Source of the DNA: Octopus bimaculoides
Lineage: Eukaryota
Length of the DNA stretch: 64,000 nt
Assembly (NCBI RefSeq): GCF_001194135.2
Contig: NC_068983.1
Location: 3,197,754 to 3,261,753, forward strand
Direction of reading: 5' to 3'
Shown: positions 5,612 to 64,000 of the stretch, one piece after another
How positions within the stretch are numbered: the first letter of the stretch is position 1
How the letters are laid out: the number at the start of each line of letters is the position of its first letter
The notes under the pieces: generated by a model
What the model was told of the DNA's origin: nothing
Database searches by the model: none
What the model saw: the letters and a program-made list of their open reading frames with translations, nothing else
Position numbers and translations under genes: made by a program

Positions 5612-5812
5612 TGGCACAAGGCTAGCAAGTTCGGGAGAGGGGAAAGTCTTTAGCTTCGACCCCAGTTTTCAGCTGGTATCTATTTGATCGATCCCGAACG
5701 GATGAAAATCAAAGTCGGCCTCAGCGGAATTTGAACTCTGAACGAACAGATCGACGAAATGCCGCTAAGTATTTTGTCCGGCATTCTAACGATTCTGCCA
5801 GCTCGCCACCTT
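5612..5812 (-). mobile_element. SINE family A copy
   Basis: Reverse-complement match to head, B-box and type 2 tail. Confidence 0.8.
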
Positions 5813-5911
5813 ATAACACCCCGCCATTTATCTCAGACACAAACCGAAATACATTTCTCCAAGAAGATGAACAAACTTCGAGTGTTTAATTATTTTGGAA
5901 TTGTTCTTATC

Positions 5912-7732: not shown

Positions 7733-7850
7733 ATTATTATAAAATCTGGTAATTAGTCATATATTAATTAATATCGATTAATTATCAGGAGGCCAGCACA
7801 TCTAAAGAATCAAAGAGATTCAGAAATATTATCTGCAATCTCAGAGGATT

Positions 7851-8337
7851 AAGGTACATTTTAAAAAATAACGTCGACCACTAACGTGGACAATTAATGC
7901 GCTATTTTACCCATTACCCATGTTCTCATACTGAATATATACGACGCAGTAAATATTTTCTGCAGATATATTCCTGGAATTAGCGCGCCAAAACGAAGAC
8001 TTTTGAATTTTACCATTAAGCTGTAATTAGCAGAACCATATGCACGCGCACCCATGGCGGTGGGCAACTCTGTATACGATTCTGATGATTACGGTTACAT
8101 TACAAATCAGGCTGATGAGGAATAGACAAATGGTAAGAATTTGTTAAATCCGAAACCGGTTCCTGTTTAATAATGCTTTTTTAGGTGATTTTAAATGTCT
8201 TGCCCGCTCACGTTTTTGGTATGCTGCTATATTTCATGTTGAGAACAATTTAGGTCTTAATAGACACAAGATGTGATCTATTTCTAGCGCATTAATTGTC
8301 CACGTTAGTGGTCGACGTTATTTTTAAAATGTACCTT
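7851..8337. mobile_element. MITE-like element with 54-bp terminal inverted repeats
   Basis: AAGGTACATTTTAAAAAATAACGTCGACCACTAACGTGGACAATTAATGCGCTA (7851-7904) is inverted at 8285-8337 (one A fewer); flanks TTAA/TTAT or TA, so Kolobok-like or Tc1-like, unresolved. Confidence 0.85.
8108..8165 (+). ncRNA. Candidate type I hammerhead ribozyme
   Basis: CAGG-CTGATGA-GGA(atag ACAAAT ggtaaga ATTTGT taaa)TCC-GAAAC-CG-GTT^CCTG: complete core, 4-bp helix I, helix II, palindromic helix III AACCGGTT. Confidence 0.6.
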
Positions 8338-9537
8338 ATAAAGAGAGAGAGCATGTGATGTGTATATATTCTATATATGTATGTATAGATGTAGAGGGTA
8401 TGTGTTTGAATATATAATTAAAAGTGGTTTTGTGGCAAGAATAAATTAAATTTGGTCAAAATTAACAAGAAATTATATGAATACAACGGAAGAAATGATT
8501 AAGTTAAATCGATTCAAATTCGTCAACAAATTGTTTCCTTTTTATCAATCCCGGCATAAAATGTTTATAATTAAATAATTGGCTTAATTATACAGTTGTT
8601 GAAGTTGAAGACCAGAGCTAAGTTTTGAATAGATTCCGGGAAATGTTGAGCGAAAGAAGACGTTACATGTGGAAATAATTATGAGCAAACAGATGTCTGA
8701 TTAAATAATGTTGTTTCACTGTTATTTTATTTGTGTTGGAAGGGTGTATGGAATAGTTGTGGGGAAGAAGGAAGAGAGGGTTTGTGGAAGAAAACGGCGA
8801 AGACCACACAACAAGAGTGGTCAGTAAAATGGCGGCGTTGCAATCAACAACAATGGCGTGTAATAACAGCAGATGGTGGGGAGGAATACAGACATCACTA
8901 CAACATTGGTAGTAACAGAGGTTTAGAGGAGGAGGGGAGTGGAGAAGGATGTGCGGAGGAGAAGGCGGGGGAGGAGGACGTAGAAGAGGAAGAAGAATAA
9001 ATATGAGGGTGAGAAGCAGGATAACGACGACGACGACGAGAAGAAGAACGGTCGTCTGTTACACATTAAAGTAGACGAGATTAAATTTTCGCCGTTTAAA
9101 GAAACAAACACACACCCTCGACTTAAACAAGCAACTTTATTTTTCACTTGTTCTGGGGCCCACAAAATAAATAATGGTTAATTTAAGCAAGTCGATCCAT
9201 CTAACAAGAAGTGGAGGTTATGTCAAATGAAAAGGAAATTGTTATTTATAAAGAGACATAAGCGGTCGTAAGACATGAAGGCGGACAGCTTTATAAGATA
9301 TACAGTCTACCAAATAGAAGCAGTAACAGGGCAGGATGTGAAGAAATGGCGCTAAGATGACCAAATAATGTTTGCTTTTAGAAAGTAAAGAATTTGTCGT
9401 AATTTCCTGATGTGAAACGAGGGAAATGTTTAGATACAGAAATTTGGTTGATTGACCGAACGATCAATCAAGCATTCGATTAGCTAATTGATTAAGTAGT
9501 TAACTAGTTGACTAGTAGTAGTGGTCCTTTCTGTTAT

Positions 9538-27761: not shown

Positions 27762-28074
27762 GTCACGTCAGAATAATAAAGTACAGACTTACTTGCAAAA
27801 AAGGACGTGTGCGTTCAATAATGTAATAATACAAAGAATATATATACATGTATACACACATATATGTACATACTTACATCTACATGTGTATATATATGCA
27901 TATCAGGGTACAGGACGTTAGAACAATTAACTACAAACAACGGAACGAACACATAGGAAAACGGAAAGCCACTTGGAATATTCCTTCATCAGCTGCCTCT
28001 ATTCTAACTTGACGTTTCGAAGATAAGGCAGACCGTACTCTAGAATAGTCTCTTCCTGAGTAATATATATATAT

Positions 28075-28293
28075 GGCGGCGAGCTGGCAGAATGGTTAGC
28101 ACGCCGGGCGAAATGCTCAGCGGTATTTCGTCTGCTGTTACGTTCACATTCCGCCGAGGTCGACTTTGCCTTTCATCCTTTCGGGGTCGATAAATTAAGT
28201 ACCAGTTACACACTGGTGTCGATGTAATCGACTTAATCCCTCTGTCTGTCCTTGTTTGCCCCTTCTGCGTTTAGCTCCCTGTGGGCAATAAAG
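28075..28293 (+). mobile_element. SINE family A, near full length (tail type 1), inserted in (TA)n
   Basis: GGCGGCGAGCTGGCAGAATGGTTAGCACGCCGGGCG...GTGGGCAATAAAG. Confidence 0.9.
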
Positions 28294-28776
28294 ATATATA
28301 TATATGTAATATATATGTATATAAATTCATTTAGCCATTTATATTTATATATATACATATATACACATATGTATATATAAATATATATCTATGTATGTAT
28401 GTATGCATGTACGTATGTACACTATCGTTTTCTCATTAAGTTTTGAATTATGCCGTGTAATGACGTAGCATAGTAGTATTTTGCAGTTGATCCACGTTAT
28501 AAATGCATGGCAAGTCGGCGAACGAATGTTGTATCTGTATGGCCAGGGTTAGAGTCGTGGATGCTATACATCGTCACATTTCAATTGATATTTTAAAATC
28601 ATATTGACCATTTGTAACATATCCAGAGATTGTAGCTTGCAGTCATAATATTAGTCTATCTGTAATGTTTATATTTAACCATTATCGATGAATAGATTCG
28701 ATATATTTTGTGTTCCGTTTTAATTATAACAAGTAAAGGATAAAAAATAAAAGATCACTTCTGCCGCCAGTATATA

Positions 28777-29657
28777 GGAGGTTTGATCAATAAGTATCCG
28801 GACTGTTGCCATAGTAACGAAGCTAAAGCATCCAGTGTAAAACCTCTAGGGATAGAGTGACCTTGAAATCTGTTGTGCATGTGCAATAAGTTTAACGTTC
28901 TAGCTCACTTCCGCTGTTTATAGCAGTGCTTGAAGGGAAGGTGCGTAGCGTGTGATCGTCGCATTGACCATGACAGAGAAAGTTGTCATGGCGAAACTTG
29001 CTCAGAGGCTTACGCAAAGTCTCAGAAAGTATATGGAGAAGAGTGTATGTGGTGCACACAAGTGTACGAGTGGTTCAGACGTTTCCAAGATGGTCGCAAA
29101 AATATCGAGTGACGAATGTTCTGGAAGACCCGCAACTAGCAGAACTCAGAAAAACATCGCAGATGCGCGTGCAGCTGTGAGAAGAAATCGTCGAATCACC
29201 ATCCGTGGGTTATCAGAGGATGTGCAGGTTAGTTACGGTTCAGTTCAGTCCATTATCACTGAAGATTTAGGTATGAGACGCGTGTCTGCCAAGTTTGTGC
29301 CGAAACTGCTTTCAGCTGACCAAAAGGACACTCGGGTTTCAGTTGCACAAGATCTCCTTGATTGTTTCGAGAACGATGAAAACTTTGCGTAGGCCTCTGG
29401 GCAGGTATCGCCAAATTTTTGGCAAAATTTGATGCAGATTCTCTGCTCAACTTTCTCTGTCATGATCAATGCGACAATCACACGCTGCACACCTTCCTTC
29501 CAAGCACTGCTGTAAACAGCAGAAGTAAGCTAGAGCGTTAAAACTTAGTGCACATGCACAGCAGAGTTCAAGCTCAATCTGTGTCAAGCGGTTTTACTCT
29601 GCGTGTTTTAGCTTTGTTACTATGGCAACAGTCCGGCTACTTATTGATCAGACCACA
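28777..29657. mobile_element. Mariner-derived foldback element (internally deleted transposase; 5' region duplicated in inverted orientation)
   Basis: TA|GGAGGTTTGATCAATAAGTA...TACTTATTGATCAGACCACA|TA; arms 28777-29020 and 29382-29657; internal mariner N-terminus EKVEQRICIKFC, QVYEWFRRF, SGRP.TSRT, NRRITIR, LGMRRVSAKFVPKLL; no DDD domain. Confidence 0.9.
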
Positions 29658-30000
29658 TATGCATTTACCAAATACTTTTTTATTGGAGGTTTGCTGATTT
29701 CCAATAAGTTAGTGTCTGGTGTATTCAATGCATGGAGCTACTTTTATTATCCTTATTGTTGATTTTAATATTATTATTGTCGTCGTTGTTGTTTGAACTC
29801 CTGGAGTCTCTTGCCTGGGTAATTGGCTTGCTACCTACAGCCTACGGTACATTACTATTTGTCGACTTTGTCTTTTCATCCTTTCGGAATCGATGAAGTA
29901 AGTAACATGAGCGCTGGATCGATGTAATCGGCTGCCCCACCCATGCTCTAAAACTTACCGCTCTTGGAGCCAAAATCCTAATGAATCATTATTATTAACG

Positions 30001-30320
30001 TTATTATTATTCAGTCCTATATTTAAGAGATGAGGAATTATGTACATTATTTACATTTGACGGATATTTGTCCTCATCTTGTTTGTTAACACAACGTTTC
30101 GGCTGATATACCCTCCAGCCTTCATCAGGTGTTTTGGGGAAATTTCGAACCTGGGCTCTCATTCCTAAGGTATTTTTTGATATTATCATTATTATTATTG
30201 TTGTTGTTATTATTATTATTGTCATCATCATTATTATTCAGGTCACTGCCTGGAATCGAACTCGGAATCTTGGGGTTAGTAGCCCGCGCTCTTAACGACT
30301 ACGCCATATGCCCGTGGGCA
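30001..30320 (-). mobile_element. tRNA-headed SINE-like element (family D) carrying a hammerhead ribozyme
   Basis: Minus strand: GGGCATATGGCGTAGTCGTTAAGAGCG (A box), GGG-CTACTAA-CCC anticodon-like arm, GAGTTCGATTCC (B box), then (AAT)n, a unique 3' domain with the hammerhead, then an (AAT)n tail. Confidence 0.75.
30088..30133 (-). ncRNA. Minimal type I hammerhead ribozyme
   Basis: AACAC-CTGATGA-A-GGCTG(gagggtatat)CAGCC-GAAAC-GTT^GTGTT: 5-bp helix I, 5-bp helix II, palindromic AACGTT helix III, intact core with one extra A after A9. Confidence 0.8.
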
Positions 30321-33566: not shown

Positions 33567-33608
<42 letters not shown>

Positions 33609-33697
33609 TAAAGGATTGTGGGTAAGGCCAAAACAATGCGAAGTAAATGCAAGGTAAAGCACAAGAAAATGAATATATGAATTAATGTAGACTTGTG

Positions 33698-33733
33698 TTC
33701 AATATTTCGGGGGTTTGACCCCATTTTCAAGAA
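33698..33733 (-). ncRNA. Candidate U3-A8 variant type I hammerhead (left-arm copy)
   Basis: TTC-TTGAAAA-T-GGGG(tcaaac)CCCC-GAAAT-ATT^GAA. Confidence 0.5.
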
Positions 33734-33765
33734 ACTGGCGAATGTTATCGCCAACTTTCGTCAAT

Positions 33766-33801
33766 TTCTTGAAAATGGGGTGATAACCCCGAAATATTGA
33801 A
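33766..33801 (+). ncRNA. Candidate U3-A8 variant type I hammerhead (right-arm copy)
   Basis: TTC-TTGAAAA-T-GGGGT(gata)ACCCC-GAAAT-ATT^GAA; palindromic AATATT helix III. Confidence 0.5.
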
Positions 33802-34029
33802 TACAAGTCTACATTAATTCATATATTCATTTTCTTGTGATTTACCTTGCATTTACTTCCCATTGCTTTGGCCTTACCCACGATCTTTTATACAACATGT
33901 GTGTGTGTGTGTGTGTGTGTACACATTAAAATAAAAATGGAGAATTATTCATCTGCACAGTTCTTTTTTTTTTCACTACTACAGTTTTGTATTCATCCTT
34001 TTATTCTCTTTAAACTTCCGTCCGAGTTA

Positions 34030-48879: not shown

Positions 48880-49755
48880 TTCTAACGCTGGAAATGTACT
48901 ACGGTGTCAGCTGTTCACTACAGTGAACTAAGGTAACACCTCTTATTTTTCGAGCACCTTCCGGAGTATTCGAGCGGTTCCAAGCAGTGCTGTTTTCTGA
49001 GAGTGTTCCATCTTTATTGCAGCTCCTATTTGTTCCACGTACCTCTCGAGATTTTTACTCACTGTTCCCAGGGCCCCGACAATTATTGGTACTACTACCA
49101 CCTTTTTCATCGACCACAACTGCTTAACTTCCCAAGCTAACCTGTCATATCTCTCAACTTTTCTTTCTTCCTTATCGCATACCTATTTGTCAGCTGGGCA
49201 TGCTATATCTATAATCCAGCATAGTTTGCTTTCTTTCTCAATTAAGACTATATCTGGCATCCTGTTCTCTATCTCATGGTCGCACTGAATCATAAAATGT
49301 CATAGGATCTTTGCATTTCTATTTTCGATGATGCCTTCGGGCTTATGTTCGTACCAATTTTTTGCTCTGTCAAGTCCATACTTGTTCAAAAGTGTCCAAT
49401 GGACAAGCCTAGCCACATTGTCGTAGTGTTTCTTATATTCCTTCTGAGCGAGTGGCATACATTGGCTGGTAATATGCCATACGGTTTCACCGTTTTGTCC
49501 ACAGATTCTGCACTTATCACTTTCTGCTGTTTTGTCTATTCTGTATTTTATGTAGTTTGTTCTTAGTGCTTCCTCTGGGCAGCACAGATTTGATCCTCCG
49601 TTTCCGGTTTTAAATCACTTTTAGTCATCCACAGCCATCTTTTTTCTCTGTCTGTCTTATCTTCAACATCCCAATGAAACTGACCATGCATTCTTTTCTT
49701 TATCCTCCTATTTTCAGTTTCATTCGTTTTCAATTTCTTGTGTAGTGCTTTATCT
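48880..49755 (-). mobile_element. R4/Dong-like LINE 3' portion (CCHC zinc knuckle plus RLE), frameshifted
   Basis: DLKPETEDQICAAQ; C.IC...GETVWHI.SECT; RHDNVARLVHW; PDIVLIEK; IIDIACP; VPIIVGALG; LLGTARILRKVL; 5' end abuts (ATT)n. Confidence 0.88.
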
Positions 49756-51152: not shown

Positions 51153-51201
<49 letters not shown>

Positions 51202-51329
51202 TATAAATGTCTATATATATAAATGTATATATATATATATCCTTATATGTATGTATATAAATGCATATATATACACATACACATATACATAAATAAGTAT
51301 ATAAATATATATACGTATATATATGTATG

Positions 51330-51365
<36 letters not shown>

Positions 51366-52555: not shown

Positions 52556-52599
52556 TAATTTTTATGGAAACTTGTCAAAAAATGTTCATTTTAAAAATA

Positions 52600-53260
52600 C
52601 CGTGCCTTTTTCTGTCGGTGTGAATACTGATAAAGATGAAACAATCAAAGGGAATTACGAGACTTTAAAATAAAAACTGGCAACTTTTTTCATGACTTCT
52701 TGATGCTATCCTGAACAACTGCGCCAAAATGGCGGAGTTACAAATGAGTCAATTTACACGGGGTCAGTGCCAGGTGTGGAGAGTCATCAAGAGGTTTTAC
52801 AAGACCCTTTTCTTTGCAGGCACAGTTACCTGTTGAGCGTACCTAGGCATGCTACACCCGTCCAATTTACCAACCATACCTGCACTCTATGGAAATGATG
52901 AGTTTTTCTTTTAACAAAACAGTGCCCCGCTCCACAACTGCCAAGACGTGCGAGTTTACCTGGATGAAAATCTGCAAGGTCACTGGATAGGACGAAGAGG
53001 CACAGTTGAGTTCCCAGCAGGGCCTCTTGGTTTAATGCCTGCTGACTTTTACTTATGGGGTACCCTAAAGGATCTCGTATCACAGAAAACTGGCTTCACT
53101 GACGTCTTTTGGGGAAAAACATTGAAACGGCACGAGCAGTAATCCCGCTGGACACTTTGGCCAATGTGGCCGAAGATGTAGTTCACCGTACTAACGAGTG
53201 TCTGAAAGCTACCTCTTTTAAGGGGAGAAGTTAAAGGCAACTTGTATTAATCACGTGATG
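52600..53260 (+). mobile_element. Tc1/mariner transposase pseudogene fragment
   Basis: QNSAPLHNCQDVRVYLDENLQGHWIGRRGTVEFP..P.GL.PADFYLWGTLKDLV matches QDGAPxH...WIGR.G...WPxxSPDL.P.DF.LWG.LK. Confidence 0.8.
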
Positions 53261-62104: not shown

Positions 62105-64000
62105 AACTTTGATAGGTTTCGGCCAGTATAGGCCCCGGCCATGTCTAACATAACAGCACCACGTGGTGAAGTCATTCAGTCATATATGGGACACCATGGC
62201 ACACTCTAGCAAAGAGTTATTATTGTTGGAGACATATCCGGGTGGAGGAGGTTGGTCCGGGATTTATTGTAGAAATTTGTCTAGAGAACATTTTAATTTT
62301 ATGGGATCCGTTTCCGTTTTGACGTATTTTGGTATGGTATTAAAAACAGCTGGACCGGTTGAGGTAAAGTAGCTATGTCGTAATGTTGCTACGTGTCCTG
62401 AGTTCGATTTTTGTAGTGGGCGGGTAGAACAGGGGCCAAGTCTTGGATGGATTTTAAAATTGATGCCAACATCATTTGTGCAATATTGATGGAATATTTT
62501 GCACATCACACAAATGATGTAACGCTCCCGGCGGCGTTGGAGATAGTAGAAATTGAGTTTTTTAGTTGACCCCAATAGTCAATGCCTCTCATGCTGCCTA
62601 TCTTTCTTGTTATTGACCTCTGGAGTGCTTCCACTTTCATAACGAGTTGCTTCGTATGGGGAGACCACAGTGGGCAACAATATTCAAGGTGGGGTCGGGC
62701 AAAAGTAGAGTAGAGAAGGATGATGGTGTAGGCATCTCTAGACCGGAAAGTTCTCAGAATTCAGGAGCACATCTTGCGAGCCAAGTCAACCTTACTATTT
62801 ACGTGGGAACTCCAGCTTAGATTGCTATCAACAATTACTGCAAAGTCTTTGGTGTTGCTGTATGACCCTAGGGAGTCGCCCGAGAGAAGAGCTTATGGTA
62901 ATTTCAGAGTATACTCTTTTCTAAAGTGGATCAAATCAAACTAATCTTCATTTAGAAGCATATTGTTTTTTTCCGTCCATTGGATAACAGCAAACAGATC
63001 CGAAGGCATGTTCGATCTCCCATACTGTTTATGGCTTTCTGGAGTCTTGCATCATCAGCAAAGATTTTCAATGTAGAATGTTTGATGACGTCCACCATAT
63101 CATTGATGTAGATAATGAAGAGGAGTGTAGGCAACACAGTACCTTGTGGGACACCACTATGACTTTGGCTGAGCTTGATCGTATTCCCTCAAACACATGT
63201 TTTTTGTTCGTCAGGAAACACTTTATCCACTGCAGCAGCTTTCCACGGACCCCAATGCTGGACAGTTTCTTCAGCAGGATTTTGTGGTCCACTCTGTCAA
63301 ATACCTTGCTGAAATCAAGGTATATGATGGTCAGTGTTGGAGTCCTCTCCCAACGCGTTTAAGATGTCATCAAAATGGTGTAGCAGCTGCGTCAGGCAGT
63401 CCCTGCCATCATGGAAACCATGCTGGTTGTTGTGTCTCAGGAAGTGAGTTATTCGCGATCTCACCACCCTCTCAAATACTTTAATGAAATGAGAAGTGAG
63501 CAAAATCGGACGGTAGTTAATTGCAAGAAATTTGTTTCCCTTTTTGAAAACTGGAACGACAGACTGGGAAAGAAAATGATCAGGAATGTTACCTGCATCA
63601 AGTGAGTTTCTCCAGAGCTCTGCTAGAGGGGGTGCAATTTGACAGTGCCCGGGAACTAATCTTGACCTACTGCCGAGTTGTGCTTGATCGTATTTATTTC
63701 TGTTAGGATATCAGAAGCACCAAAAGTTATGTTAGATATGGTTAGCTGAGGGTTTACATCACTGATACTAGCCAGGTCAACCGCATTAGTGTTACTGAAA
63801 ACAGAGCATATGGATTTGCATCATCATGTAGAGTGTTGTTCCCATCAACCAGAAGACCAACAGTGGAAACAGCGTCTGTATGTGTTTTTGAAAATGAAAA
63901 GAACATTTTGGGATTGAGTTTTATTTTCTCAATGGCCCAACTCTCCTCAGCTGCTCTTTGACTGTTAATGATGGTCATCAAGCTTTTTTGGAGGTCGTAT
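62105..64000 (-). mobile_element. CR1/L2-like LINE, reverse transcriptase region to 3' end, frameshifted; continues beyond the window
   Basis: IKLNPKMFF; LTSHFIKVFERVVR..I..FL...QHGF..GRDCLTQLL; DFSKVFDRVDH.ILL.KL..IGVRGKLL.WI..FL; LLFIIYINDM...LKIFADD; C-terminal FNTIPKYV...LDKFLQ.IPDQP. Confidence 0.92.

What the first reader, a model, noticed from the sequence alone, without database searches (positions are those of the whole stretch)
7851..8337. Complete hammerhead motif in the middle of a TIR-bounded, DNA-transposon-like element
Seen: a 487-bp element with near-perfect 54-bp terminal inverted repeats carries, at 8108-8165 (+), CAGG-CUGAUGA-[GGA..ACAAAU/AUUUGU..UCC]-GAAAC-CG-GUU^CCUG. All core positions are present, helix I is 4 bp and helix III is the palindrome AACCGGUU. 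Established: genomic hammerheads are normally tied to retroelements, not cut-and-paste MITEs. Inference: either the MITE captured a ribozyme that could destroy or process read-through transcripts, or the element is an RNA-mobilised element with inverted termini. Alternative: the motif overlaps what looks like a transposase first exon (ATGGCGGTG...GCTGATGAGGAA...ATG|GTAAGA) and could be coincidental.
Basis: partly seen in the sequence, partly recalled or inferred. Interest (0 to 1): 0.72.

Follow-up and report, generated by a model that had tools for sequence, protein, structure and literature searches.

The report
Hammerhead ribozyme motif in inverted-ended insertion
A 485-bp insertion with 54-base inverted ends really does carry a complete hammerhead self-cleaving RNA motif, of the weak "works only as a pair" kind typical of animal Penelope-like retroelements, so it is probably a retroelement fragment with a mirrored twin and not a cut-and-paste transposon that captured a ribozyme.

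Summary
Both parts of the observation are in the sequence. The inverted arms are 7850-7904 and 8285-8338, identical except for one base in an A-run. The hammerhead motif is at 8108-8165 (+).

The motif has every core position, a 4-bp helix I, a 33-nt helix II hairpin (11 of 13 positions paired) and the palindrome ACCGGU in place of helix III. A loose descriptor finds about 0.01 such motifs per window by chance. Requiring the palindromic helix III lowers this to about 3e-4. A descriptor fitted after seeing the motif gave no hit in 4 million simulated sites.

Rfam finds no hammerhead here. It also misses a second motif in the same window, a clear minimal hammerhead at 30088-30133 (-), so its silence says little.

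Published work ties this architecture to Penelope-like elements (PLEs) and animal retrozymes, whose insertions often carry an inverted 5'-truncated copy.

Best reading (about 0.5): a 5'-truncated PLE/retrozyme-type insertion with a 54-nt inverted twin. Rivals are a MITE with a captured hammerhead (about 0.15) and a MITE with a chance motif (about 0.2).

The "transposase first exon" has no support. No other copy could be retrieved, so family conservation and cleavage are untested.

The parts
7850..7904 (+). Left inverted arm (55 nt). In the favoured reading it is an inverted copy of the last ~54 nt of the retro-insertion. In the rival reading it is the left TIR of a MITE.
8285..8338 (+). Right inverted arm (54 nt). 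In the favoured reading it is the 3' end of the main, sense-strand copy.
7905..8284 (+). Non-palindromic interior. With the right arm it forms a 434-nt unit (7905-8338) whose hammerhead cut site lies about 175 nt from the 3' end.
   Evidence: No similarity elsewhere in the window beyond one 42-nt, 81% match at 37552-37590.
8108..8111 (+). Helix I, 5' strand (positions 2.4-2.1), CAGG
   Evidence: found by descriptor
8112..8118 (+). Core C3-A9, CUGAUGA
8119..8151 (+). Helix II hairpin. It opens with the G10.1-C11.1 pair and has 13 in-register positions, 11 of them paired, two A.A mismatches and the loop GGUAAGA.
8152..8154 (+). Core G12 A13 A14
8155..8160 (+). A15.1 to U16.1, the 6-nt palindrome ACCGGU. 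As a monomer it gives one base pair plus a CCGG tetraloop. Between two copies it gives a 6-bp helix III.
   Evidence: architecture as described in PMC4209133 and PMC7229834
8161..8165 (+). U17 (cleavage predicted between 8161 and 8162), followed by the helix I 3' strand CCUG
8054..8125 (+). It has no support as coding sequence.
8133..8184 (+). Possible 52-nt GT...AG intron (G|GUAAGA ... UUUUUUAG|G) overlapping the 3' half of the hammerhead. Its removal would keep the frame of the short ORF open as far as 8276. This is speculative.
   Evidence: No homologue for the downstream frame.

Best explanation
The motif at 8108-8165 is a real, evolutionarily derived type-I hammerhead of the animal 'dimeric' class. 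It has a complete core, a short helix I, a long helix II, and a helix III reduced to one base pair plus a palindromic tetraloop.

The unit that carries it is most likely a heavily 5'-truncated, non-coding insertion of a Penelope-like element (PLE) or a PLE-mobilised retrozyme-type element, not a cut-and-paste MITE. The main copy would be 7905-8338, in sense on the + strand. The left arm would be a 54-nt inverted, 5'-truncated twin made in the same integration event by target-primed reverse transcription from both nicked DNA strands. Both outer ends would then be element 3' ends. This step is inferred.

In a source element arranged in tandem, two such hammerheads in one transcript would pair through ACCGGU to form a double hammerhead and cut multimeric RNA to unit length. 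This is established for the class, not shown here.

In this solitary copy the ribozyme has no partner within 64 kb and cannot form helix III alone. It is probably an inert passenger unless transcripts of other copies pair with it in trans.
For: (1) The full core, G10.1-C11.1, A15.1-U16.1 and H17 are present, and chance expectation is low.

(2) The architecture matches published descriptions. Animal type-I hammerheads have a helix III of 1-2 bp capped by a 2-4-nt palindromic loop and act as dimers. PLE variants have a 4-5-bp helix I and a larger helix II (PMC4209133, read). [quoted passage not shown]

(3) The same window holds a second hammerhead at 30088-30133 (-): AACAC-CUGAUGA-A-GGCUG..CAGCC-GAAA-CG-UU|GUGUU. 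It has the extra nucleotide after A9 and an ACGU palindrome. The chance expectation for that class is about 1e-5 per window. Hammerheads of this kind are therefore evidently present in this genome.

(4) PLE insertions are highly 5'-truncated and 'often' carry an adjacent inverted 5'-truncated copy that forms flanking inverted repeats, with the hammerhead in the pLTR near the 3' end (PMC8557442). One PLE protein nicks and extends both DNA strands at AT-rich ATT sites and starts reverse transcription about 110-120 nt beyond the ORF start, which lies within the hammerhead at the start of stem II (PMC11167929). Here the flanks are AT-rich (GGATTA / TATAAAG) and the cut site is about 175 nt from the 3' end.

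(6) The double-hammerhead fold is energetically feasible: -28.5 kcal/mol against -26.4 for two separate monomers.
Against: - No other copy of the element, no PLE reverse transcriptase or GIY-YIG ORF, and no tandem partner was found in the window or in any searchable collection. Family conservation and covariation are therefore untested.
- Equal-length, near-identical 54-nt arms with TA on both sides and a size of about 485 bp are also the classic look of a Tc1/mariner-type MITE.
- Helix II (33 nt, two A.A mismatches) is much longer than in described PLE hammerheads, and the extra nucleotide between A9 and G10.1 typical of PLE minimal hammerheads is absent.
- Rfam hammerhead models give no hit even at E<=10 on 86 nt, although they also miss the control motif.
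- The hammerhead fold is not the minimum-free-energy fold (z = -1.17). The dimer MFE of -34.2 is lower than the double-hammerhead fold.
- The flanks of the two window hammerheads are not alignable.
Confidence: 0.5

Rival explanations
1. The element is a cut-and-paste MITE (TA-targeting, Tc1/mariner-like) whose interior contains a real hammerhead. The ribozyme would have arrived by capture or nested insertion of a PLE/retrozyme fragment, and would now be spread by a DNA transposase. It would be a passenger that could at most cut read-through transcripts when two copies pair.
For: The arms are near-perfect and 54-55 nt long. TA is present on both sides. The size is about 485 bp. Two direct 10-mers, TAACGTCGAC and TAACGTGGAC, lie inside each arm and could be transposase binding sites. 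The motif exceeds chance. Mariner-like and hAT-like remnants in the window show that DNA transposons were active in this genome.
Against: TA is self-complementary, so it is not specific evidence for a duplication. The frequency of TA is 0.084, and the chance that any two flanking dinucleotides are identical is 0.069. The 10-mer repeat is not significant (p 0.02 by shuffling, 0.08 in real 55-mers). No second copy and no autonomous partner were found. No paper in the library reports a hammerhead in a DNA transposon or MITE. Inverted ends are a described feature of hammerhead-bearing PLE insertions and were seen in L002.
Confidence: 0.15
2. The element is an ordinary MITE, or a remnant of an internally deleted DNA transposon, and the hammerhead-like string is a coincidence. 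It would arise partly from acidic-codon-like sequence (GCU GAU GAG GAA) followed by an unrelated hairpin. The RNA would have no ribozyme ancestry or activity.
For: The loose motif is expected about 190 times per Gb, and the palindromic type about 5 times per Gb, so a large scan will meet some. A second CUGAUGA lies 30 nt upstream, in the same short ORF. Rfam gives no hit. The hammerhead fold is not the MFE fold, z = -1.17. Helix II is atypically long and helix I has only 4 bp. The strictest chance estimate used a descriptor chosen after seeing the motif.
Against: The per-window expectation is 3-4e-4 for the palindromic class. It is lower still once the 11-of-13 helix II is required, even after a threefold correction for hairpin excess. 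An independent, clear minimal hammerhead in the same window raises the prior that hammerheads in this genome are real. Neither reading frame has coding support, and the ORF stops before the proposed donor.
Confidence: 0.2
3. The unit is a monomer of a retrozyme-type tandem repeat, or of a SINE-like hammerhead element, and the inverted arms arose later by local rearrangement or assembly error. They would not date from integration.
For: Animal type-I hammerheads mostly lie in 170-400-nt non-LTR retrozyme repeats (PMC7229834). The assembly has many N gaps and microsatellites.
Against: There is no tandem copy and no second similar motif in 64 kb. The arms are precise and no gap adjoins them.
Confidence: 0.05

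Closest known systems
Hammerheads of Penelope-like elements (minimal and 'canonical-like' type-I variants; Cervera & de la Pena 2014, PMC4209133)
   Same: Type-I topology, complete core and the G10.1-C11.1 pair. Helix I of 4-5 bp, an enlarged helix II, and a helix III reduced to a small palindrome, so that activity needs two copies. Association with inverted-repeat insertion structures (PMC8557442).
   Different: Helix II is far longer (33 nt, two A.A mismatches) than the 6-8 bp described. There is no extra nucleotide between A9 and G10.1. No PLE ORF, pLTR pair or second copy lies nearby, and no family alignment is available.
Non-LTR retrozymes of animals (Cervera & de la Pena 2020, PMC7229834; bioRxiv 10.64898/2026.07.22.740005)
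   Same: Non-coding, low-GC units of a few hundred nt that carry one type-I hammerhead with a one-base-pair helix III capped by a palindromic tetraloop. They are proposed to be mobilised by PLE machinery.
   Different: Retrozymes occur as tandem repeats. This is a single unit bounded by inverted arms.
Inverted hammerhead pairs on contig L002
   Same: Short non-coding units bounded by near-perfect inverted arms, with the hammerhead pointing toward an outer end. Helix I is 4 bp, the helix III position is a 6-nt palindrome (ACAUGU versus ACCGGU here), and the flanks are AT-rich.
   Different: In L002 both arms are long enough (106-147 nt) to contain a hammerhead each, about 60 nt from the end. 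Here the short arm (54 nt) stops before the hammerhead, which lies about 175 nt from the end. There is no sequence similarity.
Tc1/mariner-type (Stowaway-like) MITEs
   Same: About 485 bp, AT-rich, near-perfect terminal inverted repeats, TA on both sides, no coding capacity.
   Different: No second copy or partner was found. The TA is ambiguous. MITEs are not known to carry hammerheads (none found).

Membership tests
Hammerhead ribozyme (type I) | Conserved core C3 U4 G5 A6 N7 G8 A9 ... G12 A13 A14, the A15.1-U16.1 pair, and H17 (not G) | tested here: met
   CUGAUGA at 8112-8118, GAA at 8152-8154, A8155/U8160, U8161
Hammerhead ribozyme (type I) | Three helices around the core, with helix I open-ended and G10.1-C11.1 closing helix II | tested here: met
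   Helix I has 4 bp. Helix II has 11 of 13 positions paired, starting with G8119-C8151. Helix III forms only between two copies.
Hammerhead ribozyme (type I) | Match to a curated covariance model (Rfam hammerhead families) | tested here: not met
   No hammerhead hit at the gathering score or at E<=10, even on 86 nt. The control minimal hammerhead at 30088-30133 is missed as well, so this test has little power for this class.
Hammerhead ribozyme (type I) | Self-cleavage 3' of position 17 | not testable with these tools
   Needs in vitro transcription of monomer and dimer constructs.
Hammerhead ribozyme (type I) | Core conservation and helix covariation across family copies | tested here: inconclusive
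   No other copy could be retrieved.
Animal 'dimeric' hammerheads of PLEs and retrozymes | Helix III of 1-2 bp capped by a 2-4-nt palindromic loop, or a bare palindrome at 15.2-16.2 | tested here: met
   A-CCGG-U at 8155-8160. Definition from PMC4209133 and PMC7229834.
Animal 'dimeric' hammerheads of PLEs and retrozymes | A second copy in tandem or close by, to form the active dimer | tested here: not met
   This is the only motif of its type in 64 kb. The other hammerhead is 22 kb away on the opposite strand, and its palindrome (ACGU) and helix I are different.
Animal 'dimeric' hammerheads of PLEs and retrozymes | Unpaired nucleotide between A9 and G10.1 (PLE minimal hammerheads) | tested here: not met
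   A8118 is followed directly by G8119, which pairs with C8151. Canonical animal type-I hammerheads also lack this nucleotide.
Penelope-like element insertion | RT plus GIY-YIG ORF, or demonstrable identity to the pLTR of such an element | tested here: not met
   No ORF in the unit and no protein homologue in any frame. The only RT fragments in the window (62955-63710, -) match Pfam RVT_1 below the family cut-off and read as LINE-type. Identity to a pLTR could not be tested.
Penelope-like element insertion | 5' truncation with an adjacent inverted 5'-truncated copy, so that 3' ends face outward and the hammerhead points to an outer end | tested here: met
   The geometry fits. The 54-nt arm is followed by a 434-nt unit, with the hammerhead in sense and about 175 nt from the right end. 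A TIR reading explains the same structure equally well.
MITE (Tc1/mariner-like) | Terminal inverted repeats | tested here: met
MITE (Tc1/mariner-like) | TA target-site duplication | tested here: inconclusive
   TA is present on both sides, but it is self-complementary and so equally part of the inverted repeat. Only 2 bp are involved.
MITE (Tc1/mariner-like) | Multiple dispersed copies with the same ends, and an autonomous partner sharing the TIR | tested here: inconclusive
   None in the window, in the metagenome or prokaryote collections, or in the protein databases. The source genome itself could not be searched.

The most novel reading that the evidence does not exclude
A family of cut-and-paste MITEs carries a functional, dimerising hammerhead ribozyme in its consensus. 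A DNA transposase would then be spreading a self-cleaving RNA through the genome, and read-through transcripts containing two copies would be cut.
Probability: 0.12. Interest if true: 0.7.

Novelty: new member of a known kind. Interest (0 to 1): 0.38.

Why it matters
If the favoured reading holds, this is one more example of the link between hammerheads and Penelope-like elements. It also shows how such insertions imitate TIR-bounded DNA transposons, which repeat annotators can mislabel as MITEs.

It carries a methods warning too. Rfam's hammerhead models missed both hammerhead motifs in this window, so covariance-model scans undercount this class.

If the element instead proves to be a true MITE with a conserved hammerhead, that would be the first link between a self-cleaving ribozyme and a DNA transposon. 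It would give a new route by which ribozymes are seeded into genes.

Tried and rejected
- Other copies, DNA searches. Arm 30-mer with up to 3 mismatches in the window; BLASTN of the element against the window; two 20-mers of the arm against metagenome contigs and one against prokaryotic genomes. All were empty apart from one 42-nt, 81% match at 37552-37590, taken as chance.
- Other copies, protein route. Exact look-ups of element and window ORFs. A concatenated six-frame translation of the element against 5.8 billion proteins. The 42-aa frame downstream of the hammerhead against 1.84 billion representatives. No hits.
- Identifying the organism, in order to fetch more of its genome. A TE ORF gave best hits at only 61% identity. 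The closest fragments come from a Tara Oceans contig and a JGI metagenome. An Octopus bimaculoides locus shares only 66-77% repeat similarity. A concatenated multi-ORF query gave three irrelevant hits. The organism remains unknown; it is a microsatellite-rich animal genome.
- Covariance model built from independent minimal hammerheads, to score the motif. MAFFT misaligned the three training sequences twice, so the test was abandoned.
- Sequence relationship between the two window hammerheads. The local alignment score is no better than shuffles.
- hAT reading (the terminus TAAGG fits YARNG). Rejected because the 8-bp flanks CAGAGGAT and TAAAGAGA match at only 3 of 8 positions.
- piggyBac or Kolobok reading. 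TTAA/TTAT is only a 3-of-4 match, and the termini are not CCC-type.
- Apparent arm-like match at 52581-52603. It is only AT-rich similarity.
- tRNA scan of the window. Nothing found.

Full report
**What is there.**
The window is eukaryotic DNA, about 38% G+C. It is rich in microsatellites and N gaps and full of transposon remnants.

At 7850-8338 lies a unit bounded by inverted arms, 7850-7904 and 8285-8338. The arms are identical except for one base in an A-run. A 30-mer from the arm occurs only at these two places in the window and in none of 100 shuffles.

The flanks read GAGGAT-TA-AGGTAC...GTACCT-TA-TAAAG. TA is its own reverse complement. The two TA can therefore be a 2-bp target duplication or simply the last two bases of the inverted repeat, and this point cannot separate the hypotheses.

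**The hammerhead motif.**
On the + strand:
- helix I: CAGG (8108-8111) pairs with CCUG (8162-8165)
- core: CUGAUGA at 8112-8118
- helix II: a 33-nt hairpin at 8119-8151
- GAA at 8152-8154
- helix III position: ACCGGU at 8155-8160
- U17 at 8161.

All invariant core positions are present, as are the G10.1-C11.1 pair, the A15.1-U16.1 pair and a non-G at position 17. Its strands are in register over 13 positions, with 11 pairs, two A.A mismatches and the loop GGUAAGA.

As a monomer, helix III can be only one A-U pair closing a CCGG tetraloop. Between two copies, ACCGGU gives 6 bp. The domain-swapped double hammerhead evaluates at -28.5 kcal/mol. Two separate monomers give -26.4 and the unconstrained dimer optimum gives -34.2. 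The monomer MFE fold pairs core bases C3-G5 with the helix III bases and is not significantly stable (z = -1.17). Thermodynamics therefore allows the ribozyme fold but does not favour it.

**Is it more than chance?**
- A loose type-I descriptor finds this motif alone in the window. It hit 5 times in 400 dinucleotide shuffles. A conditional simulation gives 0.011-0.016 per window, about 190 per Gb.
- Requiring that 15.1-16.1 be a perfect 4-8-nt palindrome gives 3-4e-4 per window, about 5 per Gb.
- Requiring also at least 11 of 13 helix II pairs gave no hit in 4 million simulated CUGAUGA sites.

The last descriptor was chosen after seeing the motif. Real sequence outside microsatellites also has about three times more such hairpins than shuffles. 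Even with generous corrections the motif is unexpected in one window, though a very large scan would meet a few by chance.

**Rfam.**
No hammerhead family is matched at the gathering score, at E<=10 in 801 nt or in 86 nt.

This turned out to be uninformative. A relaxed descriptor found a second motif in the same window at 30088-30133 (-): AACAC-CUGAUGA-A-GGCUG-(loop)-CAGCC-GAAA-CG-UU|GUGUU. It has a 5-bp helix I, the extra nucleotide after A9, a clean helix II and an ACGU palindrome. This is the published 'min-HHR' of Penelope-like elements. Its class is expected about 1e-5 times per window by chance, yet Rfam gives no hammerhead hit for it either.

**What the literature says about this architecture.**
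- Cervera & de la Pena 2014 (PMC4209133). Most animal hammerheads are type I with a helix III of 1-2 bp capped by a 2-4-nt palindromic loop, and they are active only as dimers. PLE variants have a 4-5-bp helix I and an enlarged helix II. In Drosophila virilis, a spliceosomal intron of the element abuts the hammerhead.
- PMC7229834. Amphibian and invertebrate retrozyme hammerheads have a single base pair capped by a palindromic tetraloop, which is exactly A-CCGG-U.
- Craig et al. 2021 (PMC8557442). [quoted passage not shown] The hammerheads lie in the pLTR near the 3' end, and target duplications are variable.
- PMC11167929. One PLE protein nicks and extends both DNA strands at ATT in AT-rich DNA. 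Its ORF starts inside the hammerhead, and reverse transcription starts about 110-120 nt further on.

**A precedent found by accident.**
Contig L002 was fetched only because it encodes a homologue of an unrelated TE ORF. It carries two hammerhead-bearing units. Each is an inverted pair: arms of 106 nt at 99% identity and arms of 147 nt at 92% identity. The hammerheads point outward, about 60 nt from the outer ends, and the flanks are AT-rich without a clear duplication. Hammerhead-bearing retro-insertions can therefore look 'TIR-bounded'.

**Interpretation.**
The element fits the same scheme. A main sense copy runs from 7905 to 8338, with its hammerhead cut site about 175 nt from the 3' end. 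The left arm is a 54-nt inverted twin of that 3' end. I put this at about 0.5.

The MITE reading keeps real weight. The arms are equal in length, the unit is about 485 bp, and TA lies on both sides. Each arm also contains two direct 10-mers, although these are not significant (p 0.02-0.08). A MITE that captured a real hammerhead gets about 0.15. A MITE with a coincidental motif gets about 0.2.

The 'first exon' idea is not supported. The ORF is 23 codons and ends at TAG 8123-8125, before the proposed donor. A 52-nt GT...AG interval (8133-8184) would keep the frame open to 8276. No frame of the element has any protein homologue.

**Limits.**
The decisive evidence is other genomic copies, and it could not be obtained. 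The organism could not be identified and none of the searchable collections contains the element. Cleavage is untested.

In this solitary copy the ribozyme has no partner within 64 kb and probably does nothing.

Noticed in passing
window 30088-30133 (-): Second hammerhead motif, a clear PLE-type minimal hammerhead: helix I 5 bp, extra nucleotide after A9, helix II 5-6 bp, ACGU palindrome, U17. It lies in a roughly 160-nt stretch between AAT-type microsatellites. Chance expectation is about 1e-5 per window. Rfam does not detect it, and no inverted repeat surrounds it.
   Followed up: partly
L002 2422-2676 and 7201-7577: Two hammerhead-bearing inverted pairs on an unrelated eukaryotic metagenome contig (JGI 3300010162). 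The arms are 106 nt (99%) and 147 nt (92%), the hammerheads point outward about 60 nt from the ends, and in each pair the +-strand copy has a mutated core (CUGAUGG).
   Followed up: partly
window 39430-39492 (-): Third, poor hammerhead-like string (CUGACGA core, 3-bp helix II, 30-nt helix III region). It is at the level expected by chance for a loose descriptor.
   Followed up: no
window 28774-29660: Mariner-like remnant arranged as a long inverted duplication (arms of about 95-120 nt at 84-89%). N-terminal transposase-like ORFs lie on both strands (28949-29389 +, 29248-29529 -). There was no Pfam hit at E<=0.01.
   Followed up: partly
window 22358-23544 (+): Two adjacent ORFs (182 and 187 aa) of an unclassified transposon-like protein with no Pfam domain. 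The second ORF, the one searched, has 661 homologues at E<=1e-10. The best are only 61% identical and come mostly from metagenome contigs, plus a pseudoscorpion, moths, flies, fish, a sponge and octopus.
   Followed up: partly
window 19308-20535 (-): ORFs that read like a hAT-type transposon remnant. The N-terminal piece has a weak BED zinc-finger match (E about 0.002, below the Pfam cut-off).
   Followed up: partly
window 62267-63999 (-): Frameshifted LINE-type reverse transcriptase fragments (weak RVT_1 matches, below the cut-off). Related C-terminal LINE fragments lie at 48946-49614 (-) and 12518-12784 (-).
   Followed up: partly
window 30250-30320 (-) and many other sites (e.g. 1114-1416, 5626-5886, 28043-28270, 42643-42852): A repeated SINE-like sequence with a B-box-like GAGTTCGATTCC and a recurring tail ...CGAAAGGATGAAA.GCAAAGTCGAC. 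ARAGORN calls no tRNA. A weakly similar repeat (66-77%) is present in an Octopus bimaculoides locus.
   Followed up: partly
window 33573-33926 and 51158-51365: Near-palindromes: 174-nt arms at 84% with a 6-nt spacer, and about 100-nt arms at 79%. These may be foldback elements or microsatellite-derived.
   Followed up: no
window 8081-8087: A second CUGAUGA heptamer lies 30 nt upstream of the hammerhead core, inside the same short ORF (UCU GAU GAU). Only 6 such heptamers occur on the + strand of the whole window.
   Followed up: no
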